IMG/VR virus record: IMGVR_UViG_3300042261_002385
Coordinates: 310,001-374,000 of that record
Direction: 5' to 3' (one strand)
DNA length: 64,000 bases
In this document: positions 1 to 59,640 of the stretch, piece after piece
Position numbering within the stretch: position 1 is the first letter of the stretch
Layout of the letters: each line of letters opens with the position of its first letter
Translations under genes and position numbers: made by a program
The notes under the pieces: generated by a model
Database searches by the model: none
What the model saw: the letters and a program-made list of their open reading frames with translations, nothing else
What the model was told of the DNA's origin: nothing

Positions 1-815
1 CTTCTTATTAGCTTTTCTTCCCAATCTACAACATTGTCCATAAAGTCTTCATACTGTTCTTCACTACAATATCCCATAGCTGGTTCTACTACTGCTCTAT
101 TATACCAACTTCTATCAAAGAAAACAATTTCGCCAGATTTCGGTAAATGTTTTTCATATCTTTTGAACCAATTATTTTTTTCTTCTTCAGTTGGAACCCC
201 AAGAGCGACAACTCTAAAACCATTTGGATTGAGATACTCAACAAACCTTTTTATTGTCGAACCTTTACCAGCAGCATCTCTACCCTCAAAAACTATCGCT
301 ACCTTTTGACCGGTTTTTTTAACCCATTCTTGTAGTTTTAGTAATTCAACTTGTAGCTGATATTTCTCTGACTCATATTGTCTTCTACCAATTATTGATC
401 CTTCACCTTCAAATTCATCAAAGTGGTCTTCTTTCTTACCCTGTTTGTGTATCTGGTCAATTCTCACACCAATAGAAACGTAGTAATCATCAAAAGCTTC
501 TCTAACTTTTCTTTTAGTATTTCTTTTCTTTAGTTCTAAAAGTTGATTAATTTTACGAAGAAAAGCTTCAATATTCAATTCAGAGACAACTTCTTCAGTA
601 AATTCATTAGTAAGTTCTCTAATAACAACTTTGACATCAATTGAGTCGAAATTCCTATACTCAACTTTGTTTGTTTCAAAATTATATATGATATTGGCTA
701 AGATGTATGTTCTATATTCACCGAGTCTAAATATCAGATTTTGTTTCAAAGTCTCTAATGACTTCTCATCCATATCTTCAATCCAAATCTCCTCTAAAAT
801 CTTTTTATAATTCAT
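1..815 (-). CDS. ppk2: Polyphosphate kinase 2 family protein with ~140-aa N-terminal extension (runs off the left edge; absent from ORF track)
   Basis: Manual translation from ATG at 815 is open to the window edge: MNYKKILEE...LQVELLKLQEWVKKTGQKVAIVFEGRDAAGKGSTIKRF...FDRSWYNRAVVEPAMGYC. The EGRDAAGKG Walker A and DRSWY motifs are PPK2 hallmarks. Confidence 0.93.
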   Translation of the reverse strand, partial: MNYKKILEEIWIEDMDEKSLETLKQNLIFRLGEYRTYILANIIYNFETNKVEYRNFDSIDVKVVIRELTNEFTEEVVSELNIEAFLRKINQLLELKKRNTKRKVREAFDDYYVSIGVRIDQIHKQGKKEDHFDEFEGEGSIIGRRQYESEKYQLQVELLKLQEWVKKTGQKVAIVFEGRDAAGKGSTIKRFVEYLNPNGFRVVALGVPTEEEKNNWFKRYEKHLPKSGEIVFFDRSWYNRAVVEPAMGYCSEEQYEDFMDNVVDWEEKLIR

Positions 816-4473: not shown

Positions 4474-5178
4474 TTACTTTTTTCTCTTTTTCTTTCTAGC
4501 TTTAGCTTCTTTAGCTTTTGCCCATAGAGCAGCATCTGCTTTTCTAGCACCACCAGCACCAGTGATAAATGAATTTACTCGACCCATACCCCATTGGTGT
4601 TGAGCAACACCAGGTCTATGTCCCGCGTTCCAAGCCTGCATACCTTTAGCAAAAACTTTTCTTAGAATACCCATTGGAATTCCAGATGCTTTCGACTTTT
4701 TCTTTAATGACTTAGTTACTCCTGATTTTTTAGACTCCTCTAAAGAGTCAAGCTCAGTTGATGTAAACTGTTGATTCTTTCTAAGGCTATCTATAATTTG
4801 TCTTACCACAAAGATATCTAAATCCAACTCAATTGAAATTTGTTCTTCAGTTAGTCCCATTTCTAAAAGTTCAGATACATCTTCCATATCAGCATGTGTG
4901 AAGTCCTCAAAACTATAGTTTTCATAGTATTCATCACCTTCCTCTTCCTCTCTTGGATTATATGGACCACCTATAAAGTGCTCACCGGTTGATGATTCCC
5001 TATCTAATTCACCTTGCCATTCTTCAGTTTCTAAAGAATGATATAGTTCTTCTAACTCATCATCAGTCATTACTTCTAACTCATCTAATTCAAAAGTAGA
5101 AGTATTATAAAGAGTCTCAATCATCTCTTGTCTGTTTGATGGCTCTCTGAAGCTTTCGTATGTTCTAAGGTATTTCAT
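4474..5178 (-). CDS. Conserved viral protein (DUF5824-like C-terminal domain) with CTS-like N-terminus
   Basis: LKKKSKASGIPMGILRKVFAKGMQAWNAGHRPGVAQHQWGMGRVNSFITG matches a domain I recognise from T4-like phages and large DNA viruses; starts MKYLRTYESF. Confidence 0.65.
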   Translation of the reverse strand: MKYLRTYESFREPSNRQEMIETLYNTSTFELDELEVMTDDELEELYHSLETEEWQGELDRESSTGEHFIGGPYNPREEEEGDEYYENYSFEDFTHADMEDVSELLEMGLTEEQISIELDLDIFVVRQIIDSLRKNQQFTSTELDSLEESKKSGVTKSLKKKSKASGIPMGILRKVFAKGMQAWNAGHRPGVAQHQWGMGRVNSFITGAGGARKADAALWAKAKEAKARKKKRKK

Positions 5179-5186
5179 GTTTTAAT

Positions 5187-5738
5187 TTATTTTTCTTTGT
5201 CTCCAAACATTCTTTGGTAGGCTTTAGTAGCGGCTGATTTTTTTGTTTTTACTCTTTTACCTTGACCACCTTTACCAGATGAGTAATCAGCATCCCAATC
5301 TTTTTTATATTCCTTTTTACCTCTAAAGGTATCAATCTCTTTTTTCATCTTACCAGGATTTTTAGTTAAGTATTTTCCAGGAATTTTACGACCCTTATAT
5401 CTTTGAGCTTTGACTCTTTCAGAAATTCCTAAAATTCCTAAAATATCCTTTTCAATCATATCTAAACCTTCATCTATAGATTCAACGTTAGCTTGAAAAT
5501 CAGGGGAGTCACCGGCAAACTTGGCAATTGACATATTATCGATATCAAATTCATATCGAATTGCTAAATCACCTCTTGTAAAATTTATTACAATCTCATG
5601 GTCTGATTTATTCTCCCACTCGTAAATTAAACTGTTATCAGACATTCCATCTATTAGGTCTTTCAATTCTTGCATCTTAGCATCAATCACATTATCGTGA
5701 TTTTCTATGAACTCTCTAAATAATTTGATAATTCTCAT
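5187..5738 (-). CDS. Hypothetical protein with CTS-like N-terminus and basic C-terminal KTKKSAATKAYQRMFG motif (start reassigned to 5738)
   Basis: ATG 5738 (MRIIKLFREFIE) lies 5 nt from a TAATATATA element; the track start at 5774 is upstream of the promoter. Confidence 0.72.
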   Translation of the reverse strand: MRIIKLFREFIENHDNVIDAKMQELKDLIDGMSDNSLIYEWENKSDHEIVINFTRGDLAIRYEFDIDNMSIAKFAGDSPDFQANVESIDEGLDMIEKDILGILGISERVKAQRYKGRKIPGKYLTKNPGKMKKEIDTFRGKKEYKKDWDADYSSGKGGQGKRVKTKKSAATKAYQRMFGDKEK

Positions 5739-14847: not shown

Positions 14848-14876
14848 AAAAGTCCTCTTATTTAGAGGACTTTTTT
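14846..14876. terminator. Bidirectional intrinsic terminator
   Basis: AAAAAAGTCCTCT-TATTT-AGAGGACTTTTTT between convergent genes. Confidence 0.8.
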
Positions 14877-15967
14877 CTTTTTTTCATATCTTTACTGATT
14901 TCTTTAGAAGTCTTTGATAGATAATCAACTTGTCTTCTAAATTGGTTATAGAAATCATCTTGTCTATTCATAGCACTTGATGGATTCAATCTACCAGTCA
15001 TGTTACCAAATTGAGTAAAAGGTAACACTGAATTTTCCAAACCTGGTGTTTGATGTGAGGTCTCACTTAATATCTCAGGAAATTCTCTTTCAGTTGTGGT
15101 TATATTTTCCGCATCTTTCGTGCCTTTAACTACAATTTTAATTATATTTTGAAAAGTTTCATGACTTAAATTTTTAATTAAGTCTACTATGTGTTTTTCA
15201 TTTTTAACATCGTCATCTGAAAAACCAATCATAGCAACCCATTTCTCACCACTTAGATCTATCAATTCGCTAATATGCGAATCAACATCGTGAATGAATT
15301 CCATCAAAGCGTCTTCTTTTGCTTTTTCGGGATTTGAAGGAGAACCTCCGCGAGATGGTGCAGAAACTCCAACAAAATGACAACTATCTAAATATTTTTC
15401 AATTAATTTATTTTGACTAGGTGTCTCTTTTAAAAGTCTTGGAAAATCCTCTCCTAAGGTTCCATATAAGTAGCTAAATTTAGCTATGTGATTATACATA
15501 CTAAACAATTGTTGTTCTGTTAGAACGTTATCAATAATCCACTCGACACCTTTTCTCATTGTCTCAGACTCGTGGCCTCTAGCTGTAATAATTGCGAATA
15601 TTGCACCGTTTGAAAGACATTCAATAAAATCATTCCATGAAGGAGCAAAACTATTGTTGGCTATCGCTTTCTTTGTATCTTCTAAAAAAATTCCGGGACC
15701 AGACGGACCATTATCTCTAAAATCAGAGTAAGCAGCACCTGGGTCACCATTTAGTAGTCTATAATTTTCTTTATCATCTCTAATTAATGCAAATTCAGCA
15801 GTTGAGACATCAACTGGAATCCAACTATCACCATCTTTTTTTTCTAAATGAATCACAGTTGGCATACTAAGAATATTATCATCCCAGTCAAAAGCATAAT
15901 ATAGCAATACGTTAGTATCTTCAGATACAGAAGATTCTTTAATGAATCGACTAAATTTTTTAATCAT
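14858..15967 (-). CDS. HAD-superfamily phosphatase-like protein with CTS-like N-terminus
   Basis: Motif I YAFDWDDN, motif II ITARG, Lys in KAKE, motif IV GFSDDD; starts MIKKFSRFIKES. Confidence 0.65.
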   Translation of the reverse strand: MIKKFSRFIKESSVSEDTNVLLYYAFDWDDNILSMPTVIHLEKKDGDSWIPVDVSTAEFALIRDDKENYRLLNGDPGAAYSDFRDNGPSGPGIFLEDTKKAIANNSFAPSWNDFIECLSNGAIFAIITARGHESETMRKGVEWIIDNVLTEQQLFSMYNHIAKFSYLYGTLGEDFPRLLKETPSQNKLIEKYLDSCHFVGVSAPSRGGSPSNPEKAKEDALMEFIHDVDSHISELIDLSGEKWVAMIGFSDDDVKNEKHIVDLIKNLSHETFQNIIKIVVKGTKDAENITTTEREFPEILSETSHQTPGLENSVLPFTQFGNMTGRLNPSSAMNRQDDFYNQFRRQVDYLSKTSKEISKDMKKRKKSSK

Positions 15968-15971
15968 TAAT

Positions 15972-16373
15972 TTATTTTCTTTTTGAAGCCGGCTTCTTAT
16001 TAATAAATGCTTGAAAAGACTCTAATGAAAGTTCATCATCGTTGTCATTATCGTCATCATCATCGTCATCGTCATCGTCATCATCGTCATCACCTTGAAT
16101 TTCATCATTCTCTGGTTCTTCATCGATTTGGTCTTGAATATCATCTTCTTCATCTCCGAAATCTTCTTCTTCATCGTAGTCACCAAAAGGTTTTACATCA
16201 CCCATTTCACCAACTTCTTCACCACCTTCTTCTGCAAATTCATCATCAGACTCTTGAACACTGATTGTAAATTCCTCAACAACCTCGTCATCTTTTGCAG
16301 CGTTAACAGAAATTACCCCATCAACTTCTTCGATAGTGATTAAATATCCACTTATTTCAACACTAGTTTTCAT
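15972..16373 (-). CDS. Highly acidic protein with poly-Asp tract
   Basis: GDDDDDDDDDDDDDNDNDDE tract and basic tail; TAATATATA upstream. Confidence 0.75.
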   Translation of the reverse strand: MKTSVEISGYLITIEEVDGVISVNAAKDDEVVEEFTISVQESDDEFAEEGGEEVGEMGDVKPFGDYDEEEDFGDEEDDIQDQIDEEPENDEIQGDDDDDDDDDDDDDDNDNDDELSLESFQAFINKKPASKRK

Positions 16374-17475: not shown

Positions 17476-17585
17476 AATTTGAGTTTATTTTTTTTTATAT
17501 ATCAATAAGTTTTATGTCCCTTATAAAAAACCTCAAAAAAATCAAGATATTAAACCAGAACATTGATTTTATATATAAATATGAG

Positions 17586-25712: not shown

Positions 25713-25754
25713 TAAAAGTTGAATCACAAGCAAGTTTTATTTAATATATAAATC

Positions 25755-29213: not shown

Positions 29214-31486
29214 TGAAAGATAGGAAAGTTGAACAGGGTAAAACCTATGTAGGAGTAGTTGAGGACAATCTAGACCCTGATAAGTTAGGTAGACTCAAAA
29301 TAAGAGTAGTGGATGTTTTTGATGAAGCAAAAGTTGAAGACTTACCATGGGCTTCACCTTGGAAAGATTTAGCTGGTGGTCAAATTGGTATACCAGAAAA
29401 AGGTAAAGTCGTTATATGTGTGTTTGAACAGGGTGATGCTTACAAACCAGAATACATATCAACAGAACACTGGAATATAAATCTTGAAAACAAACTAAAA
29501 GGTCTTTCAGATACAGATTACATTTCCATGAAGTCAGTTATATTTGACCACAAAACTCAAATATATTCTAATGATAGTGAAGGTCTAAAACTAGACTACA
29601 AGTTTAATAATGTAAATATCAAAAATAACGGCATAAATTTAAACTTAAAAGATAACTCAGGTTTAGTAAACATAGGAGATTCAACAGCTAATCAACAAGC
29701 TATTTTAGGAAATCACTTTCTAAATTGGTTTGATTCTTTTGTTGATGCTCTTATGAATAATACAGCATTTTTAGGAAACGCCGGAGCTCCAGTGTTGTCA
29801 AATCCAGCATTAGTAAGAATACTCAGCCAGTATAAATCACAAAAAGATTCTACATTTTTATCACATCATGTAAATTTTGTAGACAATAACAAAGTATCAA
29901 CCGTTAAATTAGAATCCAGAGAAGAAACACCCCAATCAGGTGACACTTGGCAATCTACAAAATCTGAAAACACACTCACTACAACTTCCACTGAAACGAA
30001 TAAACCAACTGACGGAGAAAAACCACCATACGATGAAAAGCATGTCGAGCCAGCAACCGATAAACCCGGTGTGCTACCAACTGAAGTTCCACCTGCTAAA
30101 GTTGTTGAACCACTTCCAGATAAAAGCCTACCAGAATCAAATAAAAAAGTCGAAAAACTCATCTGGTTTCTGAAAAGTAAAAATTATCAGATTTATGAAG
30201 TCAATTCACAAATCAATATGGTAGCCTTTAGATCGAAGAACAAAGTCAAAGATGATGAAAATACAAATATAACTAACTTATTCGATGAAGAACTTTGTGT
30301 TTTTTTCAAAAATGAAAATAATATTTGGGAACTATTTGAATATGCGATTACTACAGTTCCTGGTTATGTCCCGGCTAAAACAGAATTACCAGATAAAGTT
30401 GGAATACTAGCTCTGGGTCAGTATATAGAAAGGTTAAAAATGATTAATTATTTAGGAAATGCCTCATATCCCGCATTATCATTTGATGAGTGCTCGTTAC
30501 ATAGAAATGATAAATTAGATAGATACAATTTTGATGCACCAATCGAAACAGGAAACTTTGCAATGACAATTCATAGGTCCTCAGATGTAAATAGTAGTGA
30601 GTTTGTGTTCAATTATTCCGAAGGAGCTCAAGTTTTCAAAAACTTGAATCAATATGAACAATTCATTAAGATATGTCAAAAACAAATCGACAAAGGTGCA
30701 AAATCTACTTTTACATACACACTCTGCTCTAAAAAAGAATTTGAAGAATATGCTAGTCCGGATGAACAAAGAGAACTAGCTAAAACTTTACCCGCTACAC
30801 TGGAAACAACAACGGTTGCACCAACTGCTTCAACAGCCGTAGCAGCCACTCAAAGTCCACCAGCGAACGAATATAAAAAAGAAATGGAGTCTTTAATAAA
30901 GAGAAGGTTTGCTTCAGAGTCAGGTAAACCTGGAATAAAAAGTTTTATAGATAGATTTACCAAAGATGGTTCTAACTCGTTTGAGGTTAGTAAGTCAATC
31001 TCTTTTGCAGAGGGCATAGGTCGCAAAAATATTGAAGAATTAAATAAAAGTATGTTAGGTTTATCTAAATCAGAAATAGGAGATAATACTATTAAATATT
31101 TGGTTTTAAAAAGAATCTATCCAAAACTGAAAAAAGAACTTCAAAATCACATCAATTATTTAATCAAAAAAGGTAAACTCGATGAAAAAGATTATTACTA
31201 TGTTACTGATGGAAAAAGGTCTATTGAGAAAGGATTATATGTCTGGAGAGTTTCATTCAAAAAAAATCCGGATCCTAAAGCTCCACCAACAACCAATCCG
31301 TTTATCTTACCAAATCTATTATCTGAAACGACTTTTATAGGATTGACTAAGACTTATACTAATTTAAGACTACCAAGTGGTCAATTGCAACCTGATAAAC
31401 CGTCAAAGAATAATAGTTGGGTTCTAGAAGACACAGATCCACCGTTATATTTTGTTGAAATAAAATTTGTTCCATTTACAAAATAA
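29213..31486 (+). CDS. gp5/Vgr-like baseplate spike (OB-fold) fused to a YkuD-like domain and an unknown C-terminal domain
   Basis: YVGVVEDNLDPDKLGRLKIRV...DLPWASP...IPEKG..V...FEQGD..KP.Y OB-fold; middle ITTVPG...GQY...TIHR...YSEGAQVF. Confidence 0.78.
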   Translation: MKDRKVEQGKTYVGVVEDNLDPDKLGRLKIRVVDVFDEAKVEDLPWASPWKDLAGGQIGIPEKGKVVICVFEQGDAYKPEYISTEHWNINLENKLKGLSDTDYISMKSVIFDHKTQIYSNDSEGLKLDYKFNNVNIKNNGINLNLKDNSGLVNIGDSTANQQAILGNHFLNWFDSFVDALMNNTAFLGNAGAPVLSNPALVRILSQYKSQKDSTFLSHHVNFVDNNKVSTVKLESREETPQSGDTWQSTKSENTLTTTSTETNKPTDGEKPPYDEKHVEPATDKPGVLPTEVPPAKVVEPLPDKSLPESNKKVEKLIWFLKSKNYQIYEVNSQINMVAFRSKNKVKDDENTNITNLFDEELCVFFKNENNIWELFEYAITTVPGYVPAKTELPDKVGILALGQYIERLKMINYLGNASYPALSFDECSLHRNDKLDRYNFDAPIETGNFAMTIHRSSDVNSSEFVFNYSEGAQVFKNLNQYEQFIKICQKQIDKGAKSTFTYTLCSKKEFEEYASPDEQRELAKTLPATLETTTVAPTASTAVAATQSPPANEYKKEMESLIKRRFASESGKPGIKSFIDRFTKDGSNSFEVSKSISFAEGIGRKNIEELNKSMLGLSKSEIGDNTIKYLVLKRIYPKLKKELQNHINYLIKKGKLDEKDYYYVTDGKRSIEKGLYVWRVSFKKNPDPKAPPTTNPFILPNLLSETTFIGLTKTYTNLRLPSGQLQPDKPSKNNSWVLEDTDPPLYFVEIKFVPFTK

Positions 31487-31785: not shown

Positions 31786-34008
31786 TTATGGCTTAAATAA
31801 ATCAGTTCCATTGTATTCCCAATGCCAAGGTTCATATCCAGCACCGGCTTTTTTAGCCCAGTTTGGATTAATCCAGCCATATTTTTTTGCATTAGCTTCC
31901 ATCCAGTCGAAATATTGATTGCCTGGACCATTTCCAAAACCACCAATATCTACTGCTTGACCCCAACCATGTTTTGATGTTCCTGGAGGAGCAGCCGCTA
32001 CACCTGTTGGTTTTTTAGCATTAAACGATCCGACTTTTCTACCTTTATTTTTAGGATCGACTTTTTTGGTATATGGATTTAATCCAGTATCATAATAGTC
32101 CCAATCAAAAATTTTGTTCTGAACGTTAAATGTTCTGTATCCATCAGTTATTTTCATGTCTTTACCAAACTGGGCTTTATAAGCTTTGTTTAGTTCATTA
32201 AGTTTCTTTACAGCATTTTTTTCTATCTTGTGACCACAGAAGTCTAATTTTGTTAACAAATTACTTGGTAAATCACCATTAAAAACTGTTCTACCTTGGA
32301 CAGTAAGTTTTTGTTGAAACCTCTTTTGTCCAGAACCACCTCCCTTAGAGGCACTGTCCGTAGCTGTTTTTGCCGACACCTCAACTTCTGGAGTTCCCGT
32401 AGACGCAGTTTCTGCTGCGACAGTAGAAGTTCCTTCAGTTGTTGTAGAACCTTCAGTCTCTTCTTCTAATCCACCAGATTCTCCGAAGGCACTTTGCTCA
32501 GCGTCATTTAAATTAAAGTCAATCTGTTCATCCTCACCGACGAAAGCTTCCTCTAAAAACTCAGGAGATAATCCAGATAAGTCATCAGCTTCATCACTGA
32601 ATATAAATCCTTCTACCGGAACGTCGGCTTCTATATCACCAACCCATATTTGAAATTGAGGAGCAGGCTCATCAGTTTTTACGATCCAATTCTCAGGAAA
32701 CACTGGATTCATTTTTATCAAAACTACCGGTTCACTTTGTGTAGCTGCAATTGCCGCTGATCCACTTCCACCAGTAGCAGGATTTGGAGTAAGAACGTTC
32801 GGATTATCTCCAACTGTTTCCCACTTGAAAGCCTTCCCAGAATCTGTAAAGGACTTTTTAGGTGAATAATCATTTATCAAATCGGTCTCTGGATATGTGT
32901 AACTAGGAACTGCTAACCTTAAGTTATAACTTTTAGCTGAAGGATATGAGGTCGCTAATGACTTAACCCAATTTTCTATTACATTATTTACTATAAATTC
33001 ATCTTTCACTTCATAGCTAAATGTGATAGACAATGGTATTGTAGAATTTGTTATACCACCGGCAAACTCTAAAACATATCTCGGATTGTATTTATCATCA
33101 AATGACCAAAATCTTTCAAACTCCTCATCACCTTCATCATCAGCAGATGGTTGCACCACTGGATTAGGAACAACATAAAAACTTTTGAAAATATAATTTG
33201 GAGTATTCACTTCTTTTAAAGATTCATCTGAATATTCGTAACCTGAAATATTTCTGGTAAAACTCGACGGCCCAGTTTTCGGTAGAGTTAAATCTACAGA
33301 CACACCGGAAACAGAAATCACATAGTCTCCTGTGCCTTGTTCAAAGCCATCATTTAGTGCACTATTTTGAGCGTGCGCTAATGCACTACTAAGTGTATAG
33401 GTATTTGAAAGTGTTACTCCATAAAACTCATCGATACTACCTGTTCCGGTAGATGTTTTATAGTTTAATTCAAAAAAATTAGGAAGTTCTACATCTATAT
33501 CAGCTGGTGATAATCCATCAAGTAAAATCGCTGTGTCAACCAGAATCTTAGTCGGATCAGAAGCTGTTCCATTTCCATAAACTTCATATGCTTCAAATTG
33601 ATAAGTTATTTCTAGATTTTTTCTCCAAGAAATATTAATATAAGCTCCATTATTTAAGTAATATGGATCCTCTCCGAATTTTCTCAACTGAGGAACGTCA
33701 TCAGCCCAAGGATTCTGAACTATTTTAAATAAGTTCGGTCCTAATTTTGAACCTATTTTATTAGCCTCGAATTCCGAATTACTACTAATATACTCTTGTA
33801 TAATTTCGTCATTAGTTTTGGTTTGATATCTCTCACCGTCGTAAATTACTTCTTGCCAATACAACTGACCACTCAGTGAAACTTTACCAACAGCTATTCT
33901 TTGTGAGTTTGACGCTGTTCCTTGTAATAGCATTACTCTTAAATCCAGAGCACCGGTGTTTGCACCTTCTACTATTTTTCTAACTCTTACTTGTTTTAAT
34001 GTATCCAT
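31786..34008 (-). CDS. Large tail-associated protein with C-terminal M15 (VanY-like) Zn D-Ala-D-Ala peptidase
   Basis: ITDGYRTF..Q...AAPPGTSKHGWGQAVDI...YGW...EPWHWEY. Confidence 0.85.
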   Translation of the reverse strand: MDTLKQVRVRKIVEGANTGALDLRVMLLQGTASNSQRIAVGKVSLSGQLYWQEVIYDGERYQTKTNDEIIQEYISSNSEFEANKIGSKLGPNLFKIVQNPWADDVPQLRKFGEDPYYLNNGAYINISWRKNLEITYQFEAYEVYGNGTASDPTKILVDTAILLDGLSPADIDVELPNFFELNYKTSTGTGSIDEFYGVTLSNTYTLSSALAHAQNSALNDGFEQGTGDYVISVSGVSVDLTLPKTGPSSFTRNISGYEYSDESLKEVNTPNYIFKSFYVVPNPVVQPSADDEGDEEFERFWSFDDKYNPRYVLEFAGGITNSTIPLSITFSYEVKDEFIVNNVIENWVKSLATSYPSAKSYNLRLAVPSYTYPETDLINDYSPKKSFTDSGKAFKWETVGDNPNVLTPNPATGGSGSAAIAATQSEPVVLIKMNPVFPENWIVKTDEPAPQFQIWVGDIEADVPVEGFIFSDEADDLSGLSPEFLEEAFVGEDEQIDFNLNDAEQSAFGESGGLEEETEGSTTTEGTSTVAAETASTGTPEVEVSAKTATDSASKGGGSGQKRFQQKLTVQGRTVFNGDLPSNLLTKLDFCGHKIEKNAVKKLNELNKAYKAQFGKDMKITDGYRTFNVQNKIFDWDYYDTGLNPYTKKVDPKNKGRKVGSFNAKKPTGVAAAPPGTSKHGWGQAVDIGGFGNGPGNQYFDWMEANAKKYGWINPNWAKKAGAGYEPWHWEYNGTDLFKP

Positions 34009-38479: not shown

Positions 38480-40705
38480 ATGAATATAATAGATTATAAA
38501 CTGTTTTCAGAACTCCAAAGAGATGAACCAATTAATGAAGAAGTTGGTTTAAGAAACCTTAAGAAGATTGCCAAAAGTTTAGATACAATCGACCAAGCAC
38601 TTGTCGGAACTAAAAGATTAGAGATAAATCCATCTTCAAAAGCGAGTATGAATGATATATCAAATGTTGTAAGTGGAAATAGAAAGTGCGAAATTTATTT
38701 TCACAAAGACTTAGACGGAGTTACATCAGCTCTTGCTATGAAGCAAGTTCTTATGAGTCAATATCAAATTGAATGTGTTGATTGTCATATAATTCAGTAT
38801 GGTGGCTTAGAATTTGCAGTTCAAAAACCTAAACCAGGAAACTTGGCAGTGTTAGTAGATTTTGCCCATTCAAAACCAATGTTTACAATTGCCACAGATC
38901 ATCACCAAGAACAAGTTGGCGCAGAAGACACATCATCAACATACTATAAACACTCAAGATCAAACGTTGAAACTATTTCTGGAGAAATTGCTAAACAAGA
39001 AATTTTTCCACAAAGAGACATTGAATTTATCCAAACAATAGATTCAGCTAACTTTTTTAAATACGGTGTTACACCAGATGAAGTTCAAAACTCAATTTTT
39101 AAATTAGATAAATCGATGCCTATCGATAAATTGAAGTTTATGATGGGATTCGTTACTAATAGATTATTATTAGCATATAAGAACAAACCAATTACTGTAA
39201 AGTCTAAAGATGGAAAAAGAAATCACATTAATAAAAATATTTTAGAATGTTTAGTTTTAGATAGTAATCCAAATCTTTACTCAATGTATAATAACCTACT
39301 TCATTATATGAATACGGCAGTGACCAGTGATAAATTAGGTAGATTAGCTACACCTGAAGAAGTCGCTCAAAACTTAGCCGATTATATTCAAACAATGAAG
39401 TCATATGATAAAAAAGAGTGGGATGATGACTATAAAATATTGAGACAATATGGTGGTGGATCGATGTTTAAACCAGGTTCATATGACAGATATGTTGTAT
39501 TCAAGAATAATCCAGAGACTGAATTTTTCGCCATCACCTGGCCTATGGGTCTAATACAAGTATCGTGTAATCCATTTGAACAGAAAAGACTACCTGATGT
39601 CAATTTAGGAGAAATAGCTAAAGAAGTTTTATCTAAATTTGAGCCAAAATTCAATAAATACTTTATCTCATTAAAGGCTATAAAAGAAGTATATGAAACT
39701 TCACAAGATTGGAAAAATCAACAAAAGATAAAAGGTGAAGAATTTTCAGGAATCGGATTCAAATTTTCAGATTTAGCGGCCTTTTACATTGATTGTATTT
39801 ATCAAAAAGATAATGTTAAGGTATCAAATATTTTGACAAAAGTGCTTGAAATAGATTTCAGAGCGAATTCTGACAATTATGAAGATATTGACGTAATTAT
39901 CGATTTTAATGGAACTAAATATCAATTTAAAACTACTGATATTGATTTAATTAAAGAATTTATTAGTATTTGTGGAGAATTCGGTTTAAATGCTGAAAAT
40001 AAACTTTTGGATTTTAAACAAAACAATCAATTTGAAGAAACTGAACCATTTATAAGTGACATTTCAAAAAAACAAATCGAAGGAGCAAAAAATAACATTA
40101 CAAACTTACTCAAATCAGATGGATTCTTAGGAAATGGAATTGTATCAAAAAGAGATAAAATTACAGTATTTGAAGGTCTACCTGATAGTAGATTAAAAGA
40201 AGCAATGGACGCAAACTATGAAGATTTAGATGAGGAACAACTTAAATATCTAAGCGGACTTAAAATTCCAGTTTGGGAACTTATTATAAGAAACTCAGGC
40301 GGTCACCCTTCTATAACAAATATATCTGGTCTTAACTTTTTAGCTTATAATAGAGCTGCTATGGAAGTTGGATACAAAACCACTAAATATACAGACATTA
40401 TGAAAATGATTGTTGATGAGTTTATTGTATCACTAAAACAAAAAATTGATTTAGCTAGAGAAGGAAAGTCAGTTACCTATGACACAAAAGGAGTTGAATT
40501 ATTAGGTCAAGATATTAATGAAAATTTTACTTACCAATTAGTTGATAAAGCTACTGGTCAAGCTAAACAAGTCACAAAAGACGAGTTTTTAAAAGCCGGT
40601 TCTGAAACAGGAATGAGAAGATCTAAAAAGAGTTCAATAGTTTATGATAATAAAAATAAAAAAGTTATTGCAAAATTTGAATCTTTTAATAATTCAAAAC
40701 TGTAA
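38480..40705 (+). CDS. DHH-family phosphoesterase, large
   Basis: YFHKDLDGVTSA, LVDFAH, ATDHH motifs; C-terminal GGH (NSGGHP) as in DHHA1. Confidence 0.78.
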   Translation: MNIIDYKLFSELQRDEPINEEVGLRNLKKIAKSLDTIDQALVGTKRLEINPSSKASMNDISNVVSGNRKCEIYFHKDLDGVTSALAMKQVLMSQYQIECVDCHIIQYGGLEFAVQKPKPGNLAVLVDFAHSKPMFTIATDHHQEQVGAEDTSSTYYKHSRSNVETISGEIAKQEIFPQRDIEFIQTIDSANFFKYGVTPDEVQNSIFKLDKSMPIDKLKFMMGFVTNRLLLAYKNKPITVKSKDGKRNHINKNILECLVLDSNPNLYSMYNNLLHYMNTAVTSDKLGRLATPEEVAQNLADYIQTMKSYDKKEWDDDYKILRQYGGGSMFKPGSYDRYVVFKNNPETEFFAITWPMGLIQVSCNPFEQKRLPDVNLGEIAKEVLSKFEPKFNKYFISLKAIKEVYETSQDWKNQQKIKGEEFSGIGFKFSDLAAFYIDCIYQKDNVKVSNILTKVLEIDFRANSDNYEDIDVIIDFNGTKYQFKTTDIDLIKEFISICGEFGLNAENKLLDFKQNNQFEETEPFISDISKKQIEGAKNNITNLLKSDGFLGNGIVSKRDKITVFEGLPDSRLKEAMDANYEDLDEEQLKYLSGLKIPVWELIIRNSGGHPSITNISGLNFLAYNRAAMEVGYKTTKYTDIMKMIVDEFIVSLKQKIDLAREGKSVTYDTKGVELLGQDINENFTYQLVDKATGQAKQVTKDEFLKAGSETGMRRSKKSSIVYDNKNKKVIAKFESFNNSKL

Positions 40706-51812: not shown

Positions 51813-53099
<1,287 letters not shown>

Positions 53100-53683: not shown

Positions 53684-54694
53684 ATGATTAGTAGATATAA
53701 TGAATTCCTTTTAGAAAAAGAGTTTAATCTTATAGTAGATGATATTTTTCGTTTAGTTGAATCTGAAGGTGTTTGGACAAGTCCAAATACTATTGAATGG
53801 GATATGACTAAAAAAGAAGAACCTCAAACAAGTAAGGATTGGGTTGATAGAACAATTGAAAGGCTTTCAAAATTTGTTAAGAGTTTGAGTAAAGAAAAAG
53901 CTAGAGAGTATTTTGTAAAATTACTCAACAAACTTAAACCACTTCCTGAATTAACCAGAAGATATTTAATTACACATTATACAAGTGTCTTCTTGACAGT
54001 GGCTTCTTTAGCTTTTCTATTCAGTTATCAAGATGACACTAGTGTGTCTCAAGATCCGACTCAAACGGTTAAAGTAGAAAAGGTTGAGAAAATAGATCCT
54101 CAAATTGAACAAGAAGTAGTTGAGTTAACTAAGAAATCATCTTTTGAAGAAGCCCAGAATTCTGTTAAAGAAGTAGAGGCTGGTTTTTCAGATGACAGAG
54201 GAGATAGCGGTAACTATATTGAAGTAACTGGTGGAAAAAGATTTTTAGGAACAAATCATGGAATTTCCGCTCCGGTTTTACAAAAATGGATGCAAGACCA
54301 AGGTATAAAGAGACTTCCAACAAAAGAAGATATGATGAATCTTTCTTATAAAACAGCACTTGAAATCTATAAAAAAGACTACTGGGATGCGCAAAAACTT
54401 ACCGATTTGTGTAATCAAAATGTAGCTAATATTGTTTATGATGGGTGTGTCAACCAAGGTATTGATGCTATGAATGAAATAATCACAAATGCTCTTTCTG
54501 AACAAGGTGTCAAAGTAAAAGGGTGGTGTTTTACTAATAAAGGAATTTCTAAAATGAATTCTTGTAATCAACAACAACTTTTTGATTCTATTAAAAAGGG
54601 AAGAGAATCAAGGTATAAACAAGCTCCTACCTGGTCAAGACATGGTGAAGGTTGGATGAATAGATTAAATTCAATAGAATTTGTTCAAGCATGA
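53684..54694 (+). CDS. GH108-family muramidase with CTS-like N-terminus and internal hydrophobic segment
   Basis: EAGFSDDRGDSGN...GTNHGIS, A.EIYKKDYWD, DG.VNQG, GWMNR; starts MISRYNEFLLE. Confidence 0.8.
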   Translation: MISRYNEFLLEKEFNLIVDDIFRLVESEGVWTSPNTIEWDMTKKEEPQTSKDWVDRTIERLSKFVKSLSKEKAREYFVKLLNKLKPLPELTRRYLITHYTSVFLTVASLAFLFSYQDDTSVSQDPTQTVKVEKVEKIDPQIEQEVVELTKKSSFEEAQNSVKEVEAGFSDDRGDSGNYIEVTGGKRFLGTNHGISAPVLQKWMQDQGIKRLPTKEDMMNLSYKTALEIYKKDYWDAQKLTDLCNQNVANIVYDGCVNQGIDAMNEIITNALSEQGVKVKGWCFTNKGISKMNSCNQQQLFDSIKKGRESRYKQAPTWSRHGEGWMNRLNSIEFVQA

Positions 54695-55662
54695 AACACT
54701 TAAACTCATATAAAGTATTTGAATCAGTTGAAGAAATCAGTTCGATAGTTGATGATTATATAAAAGACTGTAAATGGGATATACAAAACTCACTCGGTAA
54801 TTGTGCATTTTTTGCTAAAGATTTTTATGAATGGTGTCAATCAAAAGAGTATGATTGCAAACTTATCTATTTAAAACAAGATGAAGATTTTATAGTAGGC
54901 GATGAAATAGAAGACCACATTGCTCCTATGATTGATGAACAACTAATAGACTTTGTTTATACTCCAATTGGTGTTTCTAAGAGAGTGAGACAAAACTCAG
55001 CAAATGCTATCAAAAGACAGTTATATCCAGAAATAACTCAAAAAAACAATATTGTTGAAAAATATGGACACTGGGGATATAACACAATTGAAGAAGTTAG
55101 TTATGAAGAAGCGTACCAGGGAAACAATCCAAAATGCACAACAATTGATTATCCAAATAGGTTAAATGAAACTATAAAAGTCCCAATTGAAGTCGGTGAT
55201 ACCGTTTTAGGTGGGAGATTTAAAAATAAAAAGATGATTGTGAAGAAAATCGGAAAGAACAAAAAAGGAGATATTACCATAAATGATAAACCACTTCTTA
55301 AATTTAGATTAGTTAAAGAAAATTTACAAGAAGAGGTTGATTACTATTTCAGACATCTAGAGGATGATAATTTTTTATTTCAAGTAGAAGTTGATTATTT
55401 TAGAATATTTAAACCAATAAATGAATCGGTATATTCATATTCAAATTGTAAACCATTTCAATGGTCCGAAATTTCTGGTGAAATATCAAGATATGTGATT
55501 GAATTGGATGATAGTGAAACCAGCGAAAAGTCGATTGATTATTCTTATGTTGTAAGAAAAATAGGCGATGTAGCTAGTAGAACACAAATACCGACACAGA
55601 TGTTATTAGATGAAAATTTTGATTGTGGTGAAATTTTGAGTTTTACAATTGGTTTTAGATAA
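54691..55662 (+). CDS. Multi-module hypothetical protein with CTS-like start and a possible Cys-His-Asp domain
   Basis: MKHLNSYKVFES; GNCAFFA...DHIAP...IDF; basic middle module; acidic last module. Confidence 0.65.
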   Translation: MKHLNSYKVFESVEEISSIVDDYIKDCKWDIQNSLGNCAFFAKDFYEWCQSKEYDCKLIYLKQDEDFIVGDEIEDHIAPMIDEQLIDFVYTPIGVSKRVRQNSANAIKRQLYPEITQKNNIVEKYGHWGYNTIEEVSYEEAYQGNNPKCTTIDYPNRLNETIKVPIEVGDTVLGGRFKNKKMIVKKIGKNKKGDITINDKPLLKFRLVKENLQEEVDYYFRHLEDDNFLFQVEVDYFRIFKPINESVYSYSNCKPFQWSEISGEISRYVIELDDSETSEKSIDYSYVVRKIGDVASRTQIPTQMLLDENFDCGEILSFTIGFR

Positions 55663-55706: not shown

Positions 55707-55934
55707 ATGGAAAATAGTAAACCAGTAAAAAAATCAAACAGAAGAAAAAAAAAGAAAACTGTTAAAAGAGATTGGAAGACACTTCGTTTTATGTGTTTAA
55801 ATCAAGAAGGTAAATTTGAAATTATTGAATTTCCATCAATACTTGGACAAAATTATATTGACACTTTTGGCCTTCTTAAAGTTAGAACAAAAGAAGAAGT
55901 AAAAACCTGGTTGGCTTATAACAATGTATTTTAG
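55707..55934 (+). CDS. Small basic hypothetical protein
   Basis: 75-aa ORF overlapping rpiB; AAC-N16-AATA promoter. Confidence 0.62.
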   Translation: MENSKPVKKSNRRKKKKTVKRDWKTLRFMCLNQEGKFEIIEFPSILGQNYIDTFGLLKVRTKEEVKTWLAYNNVF

Positions 55935-56373
55935 AATTTCCATAGGATCCGACCACGCAGGTTTTGAGATTAAAGAAATCATCAAATCCTATTTACAAAA
56001 TCAAACTGAACATAAAATCGATTTAAATGATTTTGGTTGCTACTCTGAAGACAGAGTTGATTATCCAGACTTCGCACATTTAGTCGCGGGTCAAATTTCT
56101 GAAAATAAAGCTGATTTAGGAATATTAGTATGTGGTTCAGGAAACGGAATCTCAATGGCTGCTAATAAATGGTCTGGTATCAGATGTGCACTTTGTTGGA
56201 ATCCGGAAATTTCTAAAATGGCACGTTTACACAACGATGCTAATATACTTTCTCTTCCTGGTAGATATATATCTGAAGAAGATGCAATTGAATGTGTCAA
56301 AGAATTCTTAAACACAAGTTTTGAAGGTGGTAGACACTCGGATAGAATACAAAAAATTTCAAAAAATTTTTAA
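55924..56373 (+). CDS. rpiB: Ribose-5-phosphate isomerase B
   Basis: IGSDHAGF, VDYPDFA, CGSGNG.SM.ANK..GIRCALCW, ARLHNDANIL, FEGGRH..RI. Confidence 0.95.
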   Translation: MYFRISIGSDHAGFEIKEIIKSYLQNQTEHKIDLNDFGCYSEDRVDYPDFAHLVAGQISENKADLGILVCGSGNGISMAANKWSGIRCALCWNPEISKMARLHNDANILSLPGRYISEEDAIECVKEFLNTSFEGGRHSDRIQKISKNF

Positions 56374-58168: not shown

Positions 58169-58546
58169 CTAATCTCTTGGAAAATCCTTACCTCTTTCAA
58201 CAACTTTCACTTCCCAATCTTTAGGTTGAAAAATCTCTTTAGTAAGTCTAACAGCTTTATCATAATCAAAAGGCTTACAAGAAAAAATATCTATAAAACA
58301 ATATCCTTTTTCTTCAAAAGAATGAACAGAAATATGAGATTCCGCAATTATAACAATTCCAGTAATTCCCCTATCTTCAGGAACTAAACCTTCATAAGGA
58401 AAAACATATGGTTGTGTGATTGGAGTCATTTGGATTAACTCAGGTATATTTTTTAAATAATCAAAGTGTAATTGATAATTAGATAATATATCTTTAGGAC
58501 ACCCTTTTAAGTCAAGGGTGATGTGAGGTCCAAATGCGTCTTCCAT
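58169..58546 (-). CDS. speD: S-adenosylmethionine decarboxylase proenzyme (class I, pyruvoyl)
   Basis: GPHITLDL.GC, GITGIVIIAESHISVHSF.E.GY.FIDIFSC (E/S autocleavage site). Confidence 0.88.
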   Translation of the reverse strand: MEDAFGPHITLDLKGCPKDILSNYQLHFDYLKNIPELIQMTPITQPYVFPYEGLVPEDRGITGIVIIAESHISVHSFEEKGYCFIDIFSCKPFDYDKAVRLTKEIFQPKDWEVKVVERGKDFPRD

Positions 58547-58890: not shown

Positions 58891-59640
58891 TTAGTGTTTT
58901 AAGTTATTTTCTAAGGTGAAATGAACATTAACACTTATATTTCTTGACCACGCATAAGGCATTGCTGAACCAGCAACTTCAAAAGAAATTCTAAAACTAC
59001 CTCTTTCGTAATCTAAATTACCTAATAATTTTTGAGAAATTTCTTCAACTAAATCAAATAAACTTTGTTCAAATTTATTTAGTGATTTACCACTTCCTCT
59101 TAGTGTGGAAATATCAGTCGATATAATACCATTATCATCAAATTTACTAGTAATAGTCATATTTCCATGCCAGATATCTTGAATATTTTTATTTAAAGAA
59201 ATCCTTAATTCTTCTTGACTAAAATATCCTACTTCTTCATCATCTAAATCAACAGAATGTTTTTGTATATCATAATCCATAAAATTTAATTCAAAGTCTT
59301 GGTCATACAACTCAACTAGACAATTGTTAATCATATTTAGCGTCTCAGGATTATAAGCTGGATCACGATGTCTTAGTTCTCCTGTCTCATCAGACTCTTT
59401 AACATGAGTTACTCCTTTAGCTGGCGCTAAATCTCTTAAATCAGTTACCTCAGATGGTTTTCCTTTTTTTCTCTTACTTTTAGTTCTTAAATAAAAAGAT
59501 GGATCTCCTGAACCATCCATAGCTCCGACACCTGGTAAACTTCCAACTGTTGCTGATACTACAGGTCCAGCTCCAGCAGTTGAGGAAGCAGTTGCTACCG
59601 CATTTTCTTGAAACTTTTTATATGATTTGATATATCTCAT
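58891..59640 (-). CDS. Two-module hypothetical protein with CTS-like N-terminus
   Basis: MRYIKSYKKFQEN; Ala/Gly-rich then basic segment ending HVKE/S, followed by an acidic globular domain. Confidence 0.72.
   Translation of the reverse strand: MRYIKSYKKFQENAVATASSTAGAGPVVSATVGSLPGVGAMDGSGDPSFYLRTKSKRKKGKPSEVTDLRDLAPAKGVTHVKESDETGELRHRDPAYNPETLNMINNCLVELYDQDFELNFMDYDIQKHSVDLDDEEVGYFSQEELRISLNKNIQDIWHGNMTITSKFDDNGIISTDISTLRGSGKSLNKFEQSLFDLVEEISQKLLGNLDYERGSFRISFEVAGSAMPYAWSRNISVNVHFTLENNLKH

What the first reader, a model, noticed from the sequence alone, without database searches (positions are those of the whole stretch)
54691..55662. Packaged proteins look like polyproteins with internal (I/L/V)xE cleavage-type boundaries
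Seen: 54691..55662 has three compositionally distinct modules joined at RLNE/T (55170) and LVKE/N (55320). Similar junctions occur in 4474 (LEE/S), 5187 (ISE/R), 58891 (VKE/S), 38480 (INE/N) and 14858 (LSE/T). Established: T4 gp21 cleaves after Glu in (I/L)xE. Inference: one CTS carries several cargo domains that are released inside the prohead; the first module here has a Cys-His-Asp pattern (GNC...HIA...IDF).
Basis: inference. Interest (0 to 1): 0.6.

Follow-up and report, generated by a model that had tools for sequence, protein, structure and literature searches.

The report
Modular leader-tagged phage cargo protein
This gene of a 436-kb T4-like huge phage encodes three independently shuffling domains behind a T4-style capsid-targeting-like leader, joined at Glu-ending linkers that could be prohead-protease sites, but cutting there is unproven and the motif alone is too common to count as evidence.

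Summary
The observation at 54691-55662 holds. The 323-aa ORF has three modules that meet exactly at RLNE160/T and LVKE210/N:
- M1 is acidic, with an invariant Cys38-His76-Asp87 and a papain/transglutaminase-like fold.
- M2 is a 50-aa basic KOW/SH3-like barrel.
- M3 is an acidic alpha/beta domain.

Both junctions lie in predicted flexible linkers. Relatives carry the modules alone and in many other combinations, and the breakpoints fall at these junctions.

The genome has a T4-type head module. It includes a gp21-family protease fused to a scaffold with twelve [IL]AE repeats. About 59 ORFs carry an N-terminal leader that resembles the T4 capsid targeting sequence.

The Glu before M2 is kept in 160 of 164 distinct sequence contexts. 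The hydrophobic-x-Glu after M2 is kept mainly when another domain follows.

The wider claim fails a chance test. [ILV]xE occurs about twice per 100 residues. It is no more enriched in leader proteins than in others, and no more frequent at charge change-points (14% against 11%).

No tool here can show packaging or cleavage. My verdict is a leader-tagged modular cargo-type protein. I put internal processing at about 35-40%. It would be a new variant of known CTS/prohead-protease and polyvalent-protein themes.

The parts
54691..55662 (+). Focal ORF, 323 aa plus stop. Its start overlaps the stop of the upstream GH108 gene (ATGA).
   Evidence: There are 445 homologues at E<=1e-3 and no Pfam or PHROG family.
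54691..54726 (+). N-terminal leader MKHLNSYKVFES (type 1). L4 and Y7 match the T4 CTS targeting positions. V9-F10-E11 is a hydrophobic-x-Glu.
   Evidence: A position-specific score on the first 12 residues finds 50 ORF starts above 8. The maximum over 2153 internal Met 12-mers is 4.1. Logo. T4 CTS residues 4 and 7 direct targeting and residues 8 and 10 direct processing (PMC9026906).
54727..55158 (+). M1 (aa 13-156): acidic papain/transglutaminase-like domain with Cys38 (54802-54804), His76 (54916-54918) and Asp87 (54949-54951).
   Evidence: VIA-align matches: Z 7.5 to SseI 4g29, 6.8 to protein-glutaminase, 6.4 to PMT-C3, plus NAT, PeiW and LapG. The triad is invariant in 34 homologues. Stand-alone leader+M1 proteins end just after 'TIDYP'.
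55159..55173 (+). Junction 1: linker NRLNE/T. The candidate Glu-P1 site ends at 55170.
   Evidence: pLDDT below 50 at residues 160-163. E160 is kept in 71/72 aligned homologues. P1 is Glu in 160/164 distinct contexts across the M2 family.
55171..55320 (+). M2 (aa 161-210): basic (pI 10.3) KOW/Tudor/SH3-like barrel. It is nearly invariant and single-copy in the genome.
   Evidence: Invariant columns. Fold matches to L24 and NusG KOW at Z 4.5-4.9. 1404 clusters at E<=1e-3, in proteins of 72-1165 aa. No paralogue in the genome. Codon comparison with L008: 17 synonymous against 4 non-synonymous changes.
55312..55320 (+). Junction 2: VKE/N. The candidate Glu-P1 site ends at 55320.
   Evidence: pLDDT below 50 at residues 207-209. 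The motif is kept in 72/72 close homologues. Across the family, hydrophobic-x-Glu is present in 132/155 tails when at least 40 aa follow, against 7/23 when fewer than 20 aa follow.
55321..55659 (+). M3 (aa 211-323): acidic alpha/beta domain of unknown function. Some relatives carry other C-terminal modules in its place.
   Evidence: pLDDT 85-94. Only weak fold matches, to HAD-cap-like domains at Z about 5, and to viral hypothetical clusters in the Atlas. Alternative C-termini.
53684..54694 (+). Upstream, translationally overlapping gene. It carries a type-2 leader (MISRYNEFLLE), a hydrophobic segment and a GH108 lysozyme domain. In one relative it is fused in frame to M2-M3.
   Evidence: PF05838 at 8e-17 and an endolysin PHROG. 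Syntenic loci: L008 has separate genes and L007 has the fusion, P0133.
4474..5178 (-). The acidic N-part (net -35) switches to a basic DUF5824 tail (net +22) at SLEE148/S (nt 4735-4737).
5187..5738 (-). The charge switches (-15 to +18) at GISE107/R (nt 5418-5420).
58891..59640 (-). A low-complexity basic N-part is followed by HVKE82/S (nt 59395-59397) and an acidic globular part.
38480..40705 (+). DINE681/N (nt 40520-40522) precedes a basic tail.
14858..15967 (-). ILSE302/T (nt 15062-15064) precedes a basic tail.

Best explanation
The ORF encodes a leader-tagged, three-domain protein of a T4-like huge phage. The genome is 436 kb and a close relative of the 635-kb metagenomic phage LR745206.

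Domain order:
- a 12-residue leader that resembles the T4 capsid targeting sequence;
- M1, a papain/transglutaminase-like Cys38-His76-Asp87 hydrolase;
- M2, a hyper-conserved basic KOW/SH3-like barrel;
- M3, an acidic alpha/beta domain.

Shown: the domains are independent evolutionary modules joined by short flexible linkers. The gene sits at a plastic locus downstream of a GH108 lysozyme gene, where relatives carry different fusions and fissions of the same modules.

Inferred: the leader loads the protein onto the scaffold core of the prohead, and the gp21-family protease removes it after Glu, as for T4 internal proteins and Alt. The protein would then be a head-packaged, ejected enzyme.

The two internal junctions carry hydrophobic-x-Glu. 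At least the upstream one is a retained leader end or M2-cassette boundary. These are candidate secondary protease sites. Whether they are cut is open, and I put it at roughly 35-40%. The motif itself carries no statistical weight.
For: Modules and boundaries:
- Homologue architectures include leader+M1, leader+M1+M2, leader+M2+M3, leader+A+M2+M3, leader+A+M1+M2+M3, GH108+M2+M3 and M1+M2+other.
- AlphaFold gives mean pLDDT 81, with the only stretches below 50 at residues 160-163 and 207-209.
- The triad is invariant.
- C38-H76 spacing is 38 residues, the same as SseI Cys178-His216. The aligned ranges 9..151 and 149..286 put them in register (PMC3498931).

T4-type head module:
- Portal PF07230 at 4.6e-60 and major capsid protein PF07068 at 4e-28.
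- Protease: phrog_207 at 1e-30, and tblastn hits to gp21 of 719 phage records.
- The protease is fused to a scaffold with 32 [IL]xE against 13.4 expected, including 12 [IL]AE.

Leader:
- 46 type-1 and 13 type-2 ORFs carry it.
- Type 2 (M..[RK]Y..F[ILV].E) mirrors the T4 pattern. In T4, residues 4 and 7 direct targeting and residues 8 and 10 direct processing.

Junction sequence IELKE is shared between leader-M2 proteins and M1-M2 proteins.

M2 is under strong purifying selection, not recent DNA exchange.
Against: - There is no proteomic or other direct evidence that this protein is in virions or that the leader is a CTS. No cultured relative exists. M2 is found in cultured phages only in HTVC008M, and there it has no leader.
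- In half of the type-1 leaders no hydrophobic-x-Glu lies at residues 7-13.
- The gene has no T4 late promoter. The genome-wide TAATATATA motif is not specific to structural genes.
- The fold matches are middling, with Z below 8.
Confidence: 0.55

Rival explanations
1. True polyprotein. After leader-dependent loading, the gp21-family prohead protease cuts after E11, E160 and E210. This frees M1, the 50-aa basic M2 peptide and M3 inside the head.
For: - Both junctions are in the only very-low-confidence linkers of the model.
- P1 Glu before M2 is kept in 160/164 distinct contexts, with variable P2 and P1' and mostly hydrophobic P3 (L52, I25, F23, Y15, V13).
- Hydrophobic-x-Glu after M2 is present in 85% of tails when a domain follows, against 30% when M2 is near the C-terminus.
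- Stand-alone M1 proteins end before 'LNE', so that motif is linker and not part of M1.
- Modules that have their own leader when alone lose it when fused downstream. Examples are L007 against L008, and the decayed internal leader 'LKNITQLKICEI' that still keeps I-C-E.
- The scaffold repeats suggest [IL]xE specificity and not the phiKZ-type [SAG]xE.
- There is precedent for multi-site processing of head proteins in T4 core proteins and in phiKZ and SPN3US (PMC5694885).
- Other modules in mosaic relatives also start after [ILVM]xE: 8/8, 4/4 and 2/2 contexts.
Against: - The motif is frequent and not enriched in leader proteins or at objective charge change-points.
- M2 is nearly invariant throughout, so conserved flanking Glu residues may be part of its fold.
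- P3 is K, T, H, Q or G in about 20% of contexts. In HTVC008M the flanks are GQE and QVE.
- The 85% against 30% contrast is confounded by phylogeny.
- M1+M2-only proteins keep a conserved short tail (FKNF) after VKE.
- In T4 itself, packaged cargo loses only its N-terminal propeptide.
- The protease-substrate complex prediction gave no verdict.
Confidence: 0.35
2. Not a packaged cargo. It is a modular cell-wall enzyme working with the neighbouring GH108 lysozyme. M1 would be a peptidoglycan peptidase or amidase. M2 (SH3-like, cationic) plus M3 would be a binding or accessory module, as in catalytic-plus-binding-domain lysins.
For: - The gene is translationally coupled to a GH108 gene.
- The same M2-M3 unit is fused directly to GH108 in a syntenic relative. 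Such a fusion suggests a shared function.
- The M1 fold list includes the pseudomurein endoisopeptidases PeiW and PeiP, and MepS.
- SH3-like barrels are classic wall-binding domains (own knowledge).
Against: - M2 is also fused to unrelated enzymes: ART-PolyVal, cytidylyltransferase, GATase, HD, ParB-like and Hint. It also sits in a basic non-enzymatic HTVC008M protein.
- Neither M1 nor M2 matches any lysin or wall-binding family.
- The best M1 matches are deamidases and glutaminases, not NlpC/P60 or CHAP.
- This reading is not exclusive of packaging. Ejected wall-degrading enzymes are known.
Confidence: 0.15
3. Self-processing. The papain-like M1 cuts at its own C-terminal junction (LNE/T) in cis, like viral leader proteases. 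The prohead protease is not needed.
For: M1 has an invariant Cys-His-Asp and lies immediately upstream of junction 1. Embedded peptidases are proposed to process polyvalent proteins (PMC5512222).
Against: The same Glu-ending junction before M2 is conserved in the many proteins that lack M1. The M1 structural neighbours are mostly deamidases and acyltransferases, not proteases.
Confidence: 0.05

Closest known systems
T4 internal proteins (IPI-III) and Alt, with the capsid targeting sequence and gp21 prohead protease
   Same: - The head module is T4-type: gp20-like portal, gp23-like capsid protein and gp21-family protease.
- A short N-terminal leader has conserved hydrophobic/aromatic residues at positions 4 and 7 and, in many cases, hydrophobic-x-Glu just after.
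- Diverse cargo bodies share only the leader, as in T-even internal-protein loci (PMC3012670).
   Different: - About 59 leader genes per genome, against a handful in T4.
- The leader consensus is its own (MK[HY][LI]Kx[FY][EK]x[FY]). It is one residue out of register with T4 for the Glu.
- The protease is fused to the scaffold.
- Multi-domain cargo with possible internal sites is not a T4 feature.
- Nothing has been shown experimentally.
Proteolytic maturation of head and ejection proteins in phiKZ, 201phi2-1 and SPN3US (gp175/gp245 proteases)
   Same: These are giant phages with a gp21-related protease. It cuts many internal head proteins after Glu, sometimes at several sites in one protein (PMC5694885).
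   Different: - Those phages use the motif S/A/G-x-E and long propeptides of 100 residues or more.
- Here [SAG]xE is depleted and [IL]xE enriched in the scaffold, and the leader is T4-sized.
- The lineage is different: closest to LR745206, with T4-like cyanophage-type gp21.
Polyvalent proteins of phages and conjugative elements (Iyer et al. 2017, PMC5512222)
   Same: - Several unrelated effector-type domains are strung in one polypeptide and rapidly reshuffled.
- They are proposed to be packaged, delivered with the DNA, and sometimes processed.
- M2 co-occurs with ART-PolyVal, Hint, ParB-like and cytidylyltransferase domains in large mosaic relatives.
   Different: - The focal protein is small (323 aa) and has none of the hallmark polyvalent domains.
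- Its proposed processing would be by the prohead protease at linker sites, not by an embedded metallopeptidase.
Papain-like Cys-His-Asp deamidase/transglutaminase-type hydrolases (SseI C-terminal domain, PMT C3, protein-glutaminase, NAT)
   Same: The fold matches over about 120 residues (Z 6-7.5). The triad is in the same order and the Cys-His spacing is the same as in SseI.
   Different: Identity is 10-15% with no Pfam match. The Z scores fall in the range the tool calls 'middling'. Substrate and chemistry are unknown.

Membership tests
T4-type CTS / prohead-protease cargo system | The genome encodes a gp21-family (Peptidase S77/U9) prohead protease together with a T4-type portal and capsid protein. 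| tested here: met
   phrog_207 at 1e-30. tblastn hits gp21 in 719 phage records at 33-35% identity. PF03420 gives only 22.5 bits, below its cut-off of 27. Portal at 4.6e-60 and major capsid protein at 4e-28.
T4-type CTS / prohead-protease cargo system | An N-terminal targeting peptide of about 10 residues, with key residues at positions 4 and 7 and a processing site (I/L-x-E) at positions 8-10. | tested here: inconclusive
   The focal leader has L4, Y7 and V9-F10-E11, which is shifted by one residue. Type-2 leaders match the T4 pattern closely (T4 data). This is pattern resemblance only. The exact T4 sequence MKTYQEFIAE is from my own knowledge.
T4-type CTS / prohead-protease cargo system | The protein is physically present in proheads and virions, and is cleaved after Glu. 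| not testable with these tools
   There is no cultured relative and no proteome. The complex prediction gave no verdict.
Processed viral polyprotein | Independent mature products are released by cleavage at the domain junctions. | not testable with these tools
   Only indirect evidence is available: flexible linkers, conserved P1 Glu, and modules that exist as separate genes elsewhere.
Processed viral polyprotein | The cleavage motif marks junctions more often than chance. | tested here: not met
   The motif density ratio is no different from non-leader proteins. At objective charge change-points it is found in 14% against 11%.
Polyvalent proteins (Iyer 2017) | Two or more effector domains in one phage polypeptide, including hallmark domains (ART-PolyVal, MuF, MPTase and others). 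| tested here: not met
   The focal protein has no Pfam domain. Only 3 of 52 large relatives that carry M2 have ART-PolyVal.
Papain-like / transglutaminase-like cysteine hydrolase superfamily (M1) | A conserved Cys-His-Asp triad in that order on the papain-like fold. | tested here: met
   C38, H76 and D87 are invariant in 34 sequences. The top fold matches are all from this superfamily at Z 5-7.5. The 3-D geometry of the triad in the model was not inspected.
KOW / SH3-like small barrel (M2) | A five-stranded barrel fold, and a match to the KOW sequence motif family. | tested here: inconclusive
   Fold matches to L24, NusG KOW and Tudor domains at Z 4.5-4.9 with rmsd about 2 A over 42-48 residues. 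M2 pLDDT is only 58-76. There is no Pfam match.
Modular endolysin (catalytic domain + wall-binding domain) | A recognised peptidoglycan hydrolase domain plus a recognised wall-binding domain. | tested here: not met
   The focal protein has no lysin or binding family in Pfam or PHROGs. Only the neighbouring gene carries GH108.

The most novel reading that the evidence does not exclude
Huge marine T4-like phages may tag dozens of genes (about 59 here) with a T4-CTS-like leader and build their capsid cargo from interchangeable modules. The junctions would be prohead-protease sites (hydrophobic-x-Glu), so gene fusion and fission are tolerated because the head protease separates the parts again. 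Within this grammar, the hyper-conserved, single-copy, basic KOW-like cassette M2 would be excised as a free peptide of about 50 aa with a core function in the head or on entry. M2 spans more than 1400 sequence clusters and has no Pfam family.
Probability: 0.25. Interest if true: 0.8.

Novelty: new variant of a known kind. Interest (0 to 1): 0.55.

Why it matters
If the leader is a working capsid-targeting tag, this phage lineage devotes roughly a tenth of its genes to proteins carried in the head. That would be far beyond T4. The tag could be used to identify ejected effectors directly from metagenomic sequence.

If the junctions are cut, they would explain how such cargo genes fuse and split freely. 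They would also define a simple site grammar for a protease family whose specificity is known only in T4 and phiKZ-like phages.

Independently of both points, M2 is an abundant, strongly constrained and uncatalogued phage domain. M1 is a candidate injected Cys-His-Asp hydrolase. Both are concrete targets for expression and assay.

Tried and rejected
- Pfam and PHROG scans of the whole protein and of each module found no family.
- Foldseek against PDB gave nothing at E<=1e-3. BFVD gave only the HTVC008M M2 protein and weak papain-like hits. The ESM Atlas gave only unnamed viral clusters. The YunG lead was not backed by Pfam.
- No paralogues of M1 or M2 exist in the 436-kb genome. M3 has only two weak hits at E about 2e-4.
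- I considered that M3 is homologous to the 'module A' that follows leaders elsewhere. hhalign gave probability 0.7%, so I rejected this.
- I looked for M2 in cultured phages that might have virion proteomes. It occurs only in HTVC008M and two uncultured huge phages, as one copy each.
- The T4 late promoter TATAAATA is not enriched upstream of leader genes.
- A PDB sequence search with the protease domain found no hit.
- The complex prediction of protease domain against the linker-M2-linker segment scored 0.02 against a mark of 0.34. That is no verdict, and is evidence neither for nor against.
- I checked the moraphage paper (PMC12619734) as a possible lineage description. Those genomes reach only 307 kb and the paper does not mention a leader.
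- I did not use reads or sequencing-run tools, because they cannot address protein cleavage.
Full report
**Context**

The window is positions 310001-374000 of a single 436,265-bp IMG/VR phage record with 31% GC. The genome has a T4-type head module outside the window:
- a gp20-like portal (PF07230, 4.6e-60);
- an intact 590-aa gp23-like capsid protein (PF07068, 4e-28);
- a 699-aa protein whose N-terminal 200 residues or so are a gp21-family head maturation protease.

The protease assignment rests on phrog_207 at 1e-30 and on tblastn hits to gp21 of 719 phage records, mostly T4-like cyanophages, at 33-35% identity. It is 85.7% identical to the 634,780-bp metagenomic phage LR745206. The Pfam S77 model scores 22.5 bits, below its cut-off of 27.

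The rest of that protein is a scaffold-like region with about twelve 14-residue repeats, each containing [IL]AE. In the whole protein [IL]xE occurs 32 times against 13.4 expected. The phiKZ-type [SAG]xE is depleted, at 9 against 17.1. By analogy with T4 gp22, which gp21 cuts into short fragments (PMC5694885), this fits a T4-like hydrophobic-x-Glu specificity. The repeats are not independent observations.

**The observation**

ORF 54691-55662(+) encodes 323 residues. The quoted junctions are exact: E160 (RLNE/T) ends at nt 55170 and E210 (LVKE/N) ends at nt 55320.

The parts differ sharply in charge. They are net -13 (pI 4.5), +9 (pI 10.3) and -12 (pI 4.3). GNC, HIA and IDF are at residues 36-38, 76-78 and 86-88.

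**Are the modules real?**

Yes. A word-based search found 445 homologues. A search restricted to residues 156-212 found 627.

The architectures seen are:
- proteins of 178-184 aa, consisting of a short leader directly followed by M2+M3;
- proteins of 209-219 aa, consisting of leader+M1+M2 and ending 3-9 residues after VKE;
- proteins of about 300 aa that have a different N-domain ('A') in place of M1;
- proteins of about 440 aa that have leader+A+M1+M2+M3;
- proteins that replace M3 with other C-termini.

A search with residues 1-160 found stand-alone leader+M1 proteins of 150-172 aa that end just after 'TIDYP'. It also found one leader+M1 protein that continues into a different domain without M2.

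At the syntenic locus (purA ... GH108 - this gene - small ORF - rpiB), one relative has GH108 and leader-M2-M3 as overlapping genes (L008). Another has them fused into one 493-aa protein without the second leader (L007).

AlphaFold gave mean pLDDT 81 using a 72-sequence alignment. Its first row, P0001, differs from the window protein at one residue, V232 for F232. The model has three separate domains. The only stretches below pLDDT 50 are residues 160-163 and 207-209, which are the two junctions.

**What the modules are**

M1 (residues 9-157) matches papain/transglutaminase-like Cys-His-Asp enzymes:
- SseI catalytic domain, Z 7.5;
- protein-glutaminases, Z 6.8 and 6.0;
- Pasteurella toxin C3 domain, Z 6.4;
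- arylamine N-acetyltransferases, PeiW, LapG and vasohibin, with lower scores.

These Z values are in the range the tool calls middling. All top rows belong to one superfamily, however. C38, H76 and D87 are invariant in the 34 homologues with M1. The C-H spacing of 38 residues equals that of SseI Cys178-His216, and the aligned ranges put them in register. The chemistry could be protease, deamidase, transglutaminase or acyltransferase, and remains open.

M2 (residues 160-208) resembles KOW/Tudor/SH3-like barrels such as L24 and NusG KOW, at Z 4.5-4.9 and rmsd about 2 A. The model confidence is only moderate.

M3 has only weak HAD-cap-like matches, and matches to unnamed viral clusters.

**M2 is the remarkable part**

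M2 is nearly invariant while its neighbours diverge. It is single-copy in this genome, and also single-copy in HTVC008M, LR745206 and LR756502.

Between the window and L008, 17 of 52 M2 codons differ synonymously and only 4 non-synonymously. For the first 35 codons of M3 the figures are 7 and 16. This indicates protein-level constraint and not recent DNA exchange.

A profile search of 1.84 billion cluster representatives found 1404 clusters at E<=1e-3, in proteins of 72-1165 aa. M2 sits at the N-terminus after a short leader, internally, or at the C-terminus.

In the larger proteins it co-occurs with ART-PolyVal, cytidylyltransferase, GATase, HD, Hint, DUF5661 and DUF3008. By eye these proteins also contain ParB-like and zinc-ribbon segments. 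They resemble the 'polyvalent proteins' of Iyer et al. (PMC5512222). No Pfam or PHROG family covers M2.

**The leader premise**

A position-specific score on the first 12 residues finds 50 ORFs above 8. The maximum over 2153 internal Met 12-mers is 4.1.

The type-1 consensus is M-[KR]-[YHW]-[LIV]-K-x-[FY]-[EK]-x-[FY] and covers 46 ORFs. A type-2 form, M-x-x-[RK]-[YF]-x-x-F-[ILV]-x-E, covers 13 more, including the GH108 neighbour.

In T4, CTS residues 4 and 7 direct targeting and residues 8 and 10 direct processing. Asp at position 10 blocks cleavage (PMC9026906). Type 2 reproduces that Y..F-[ILV]-x-E spacing, and type 1 keeps hydrophobic residue 4 and aromatic residue 7.

Hydrophobic-x-Glu lies within residues 7-13 in 50% of type-1 leaders and in all type-2 leaders (by definition). 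In other ORFs the figure is 15%.

This is good pattern-level support for a CTS-like tag. It is not a demonstration.

**Do the junction motifs mean cleavage?**

Evidence for:
- Of the eleven [ILV]xE in the protein, the Glu is best conserved at the two junctions (71/72 and 72/72). The leader site follows at 43/52 (83%), level with the intra-helical L212-Q-E214 site at 60/69.
- Across the wider M2 family, the residue before M2's first strand is Glu in 160 of 164 distinct 8-mer contexts. P2 and P1' are variable and P3 is mostly hydrophobic.
- The hydrophobic-x-Glu after M2 is present in 132/155 distinct tails when at least 40 residues follow. It is present in 7/23 when M2 is within 20 residues of the C-terminus.
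- Stand-alone M1 ends before 'LNE'.
- The junction string IELKE is shared between a leader-M2 protein and M1-M2 proteins. This suggests that the internal site is a retained leader end.
- Fused forms carry only one N-terminal leader.
- Three other modules in the mosaic relatives also begin right after [ILVM]xE, in 8/8, 4/4 and 2/2 contexts. These numbers are small.

Evidence against:
- [ILV]xE occurs 2.23 times per 100 residues in leader proteins and 1.66 in others. The observed/shuffled ratios are 1.22 and 1.14, so there is no specific enrichment.
- When acidic-to-basic change-points are located objectively, the motif sits there in 4/29 leader proteins and 18/157 others. From composition alone I expect about 11%.
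- The five extra examples (4474, 5187, 58891, 38480, 14858) are real charge switches. They are not evidence for a site grammar, because a compositional boundary ends in an acidic residue by definition.
- M2 is almost invariant overall, so its flanking Glu residues may be part of the fold.
- P3 is K, T, H, Q or G in about a fifth of contexts. The T4-like HTVC008M copy has GQE and QVE flanks and no leader.
- The C-terminal contrast is confounded by phylogeny.
- T4 itself trims only N-terminal propeptides from its cargo, although phiKZ-type phages cut some head proteins at several sites.
- A complex prediction of the protease domain with residues 140-230 gave no verdict.

**Conclusion**

The anatomy is solid: a leader, three modules, flexible Glu-ending junctions, and rampant fusion and fission at exactly those points. 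The setting is also solid: a T4-type protease and scaffold, and a large leader family.

The most likely reading is a head-targeted, ejected modular enzyme whose leader is removed by the prohead protease. That the same protease also separates M1, M2 and M3 is a reasonable extension, which I put at about 35-40%. It rests on conservation patterns that have a structural alternative. The motif statistics offered as generality do not hold.

The idea is a variant of known themes: T4 CTS cargo, phiKZ-type head-protein processing, and polyvalent proteins. It is not a new category.

Noticed in passing
Genome-wide. In the window: ORF starts at 3003(-), 5178(-), 5738(-), 9758(-), 10955, 15967(-), 41792, 45415, 49483, 53684, 54691, 58080(-), 59640(-), 60165(-), 60212, 61673, 63327: About 59 ORFs of the 436-kb genome begin with a conserved leader. 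There are 46 of type 1 (MK[HY][LI]Kx[FY][EK]x[FY]) and 13 of type 2 (M..[RK]Y..F[ILV].E). Type 2 closely mirrors the T4 capsid targeting sequence pattern. The leader genes occur in clusters.
   Followed up: partly
G000:C1:269288-271387 (-), outside the window (loci L001, L002): A gp21-family prohead protease is fused to a scaffold-like region. That region has about twelve tandem 14-residue repeats (YSEY[IL]AENLDKNI[AS]), followed by an acidic His/Asp/Glu/Asn-rich stretch.
   Followed up: partly
Genome-wide. For example, upstream of window ORFs 5738(-), 9758(-), 59640(-), 60165(-), 63327: A promoter-like motif, (T)AATATATA, lies 12-48 nt upstream of 126 ORF starts. These include the portal, protease-scaffold and large tail/baseplate genes. 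It precedes 46% of leader genes against 22% of others. It also precedes metabolic genes, so its expression class is unclear.
   Followed up: partly
window 53684-54694 (+); loci L007 and L008: The GH108 lysozyme protein has a type-2 leader and an internal hydrophobic segment (about aa 95-117). It overlaps the focal gene by ATGA. In one relative it is fused in frame to M2-M3.
   Followed up: partly
Proteins P0201, P0208, P0212, P0233, P0256, P0257 and P0260 (metagenomic relatives): These are large mosaic proteins of 550-1165 aa. They string M2 together with ParB-like, cytidylyltransferase, DUF5661, Hint, zinc-ribbon and several unnamed conserved modules, in varying order. Several of the modules begin right after [ILVM]xE.
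   Followed up: partly
window 4474-5178 (-) and 5187-5738 (-): Two adjacent leader proteins pair a strongly acidic N-part with a strongly basic conserved C-terminal module. The first carries DUF5824. The second carries an unnamed Lys-rich module.
   Followed up: no
window 51813-53099 (-), 55924-56373 (+), 58169-58546 (-): Three metabolic genes are interspersed with leader genes. One is adenylosuccinate synthase-like and one is RpiB-like; these two Pfam families are also called in the syntenic loci L007 and L008. The third is S-adenosylmethionine decarboxylase-like, judged by eye from an ESHISVH motif.
   Followed up: no
window 7542-8975, 12426-13619 (-), 17514-19202, 19232-21862, 29213-31486, 31786-34008 (-): PHROG hits in this stretch: a DNA polymerase piece, a primase, a helicase, an 876-aa protein with an endolysin-like N-domain, a baseplate hub/tail lysozyme, and a tape-measure-like protein. 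Two ORFs of 1063 and 1152 aa (22521-29213) have no match at all.
   Followed up: no
record LR745206.1, 198546-199175: The protease domain is 85.7% identical to that of a 634,780-bp metagenomic huge phage. This 436-kb genome therefore belongs to, or sits next to, that lineage of very large phages.
   Followed up: no
window 16007-16264 (+): An 85-aa His/Arg-rich ORF lies antisense inside the 15972-16373 (-) gene. It is probably a spurious frame.
   Followed up: no
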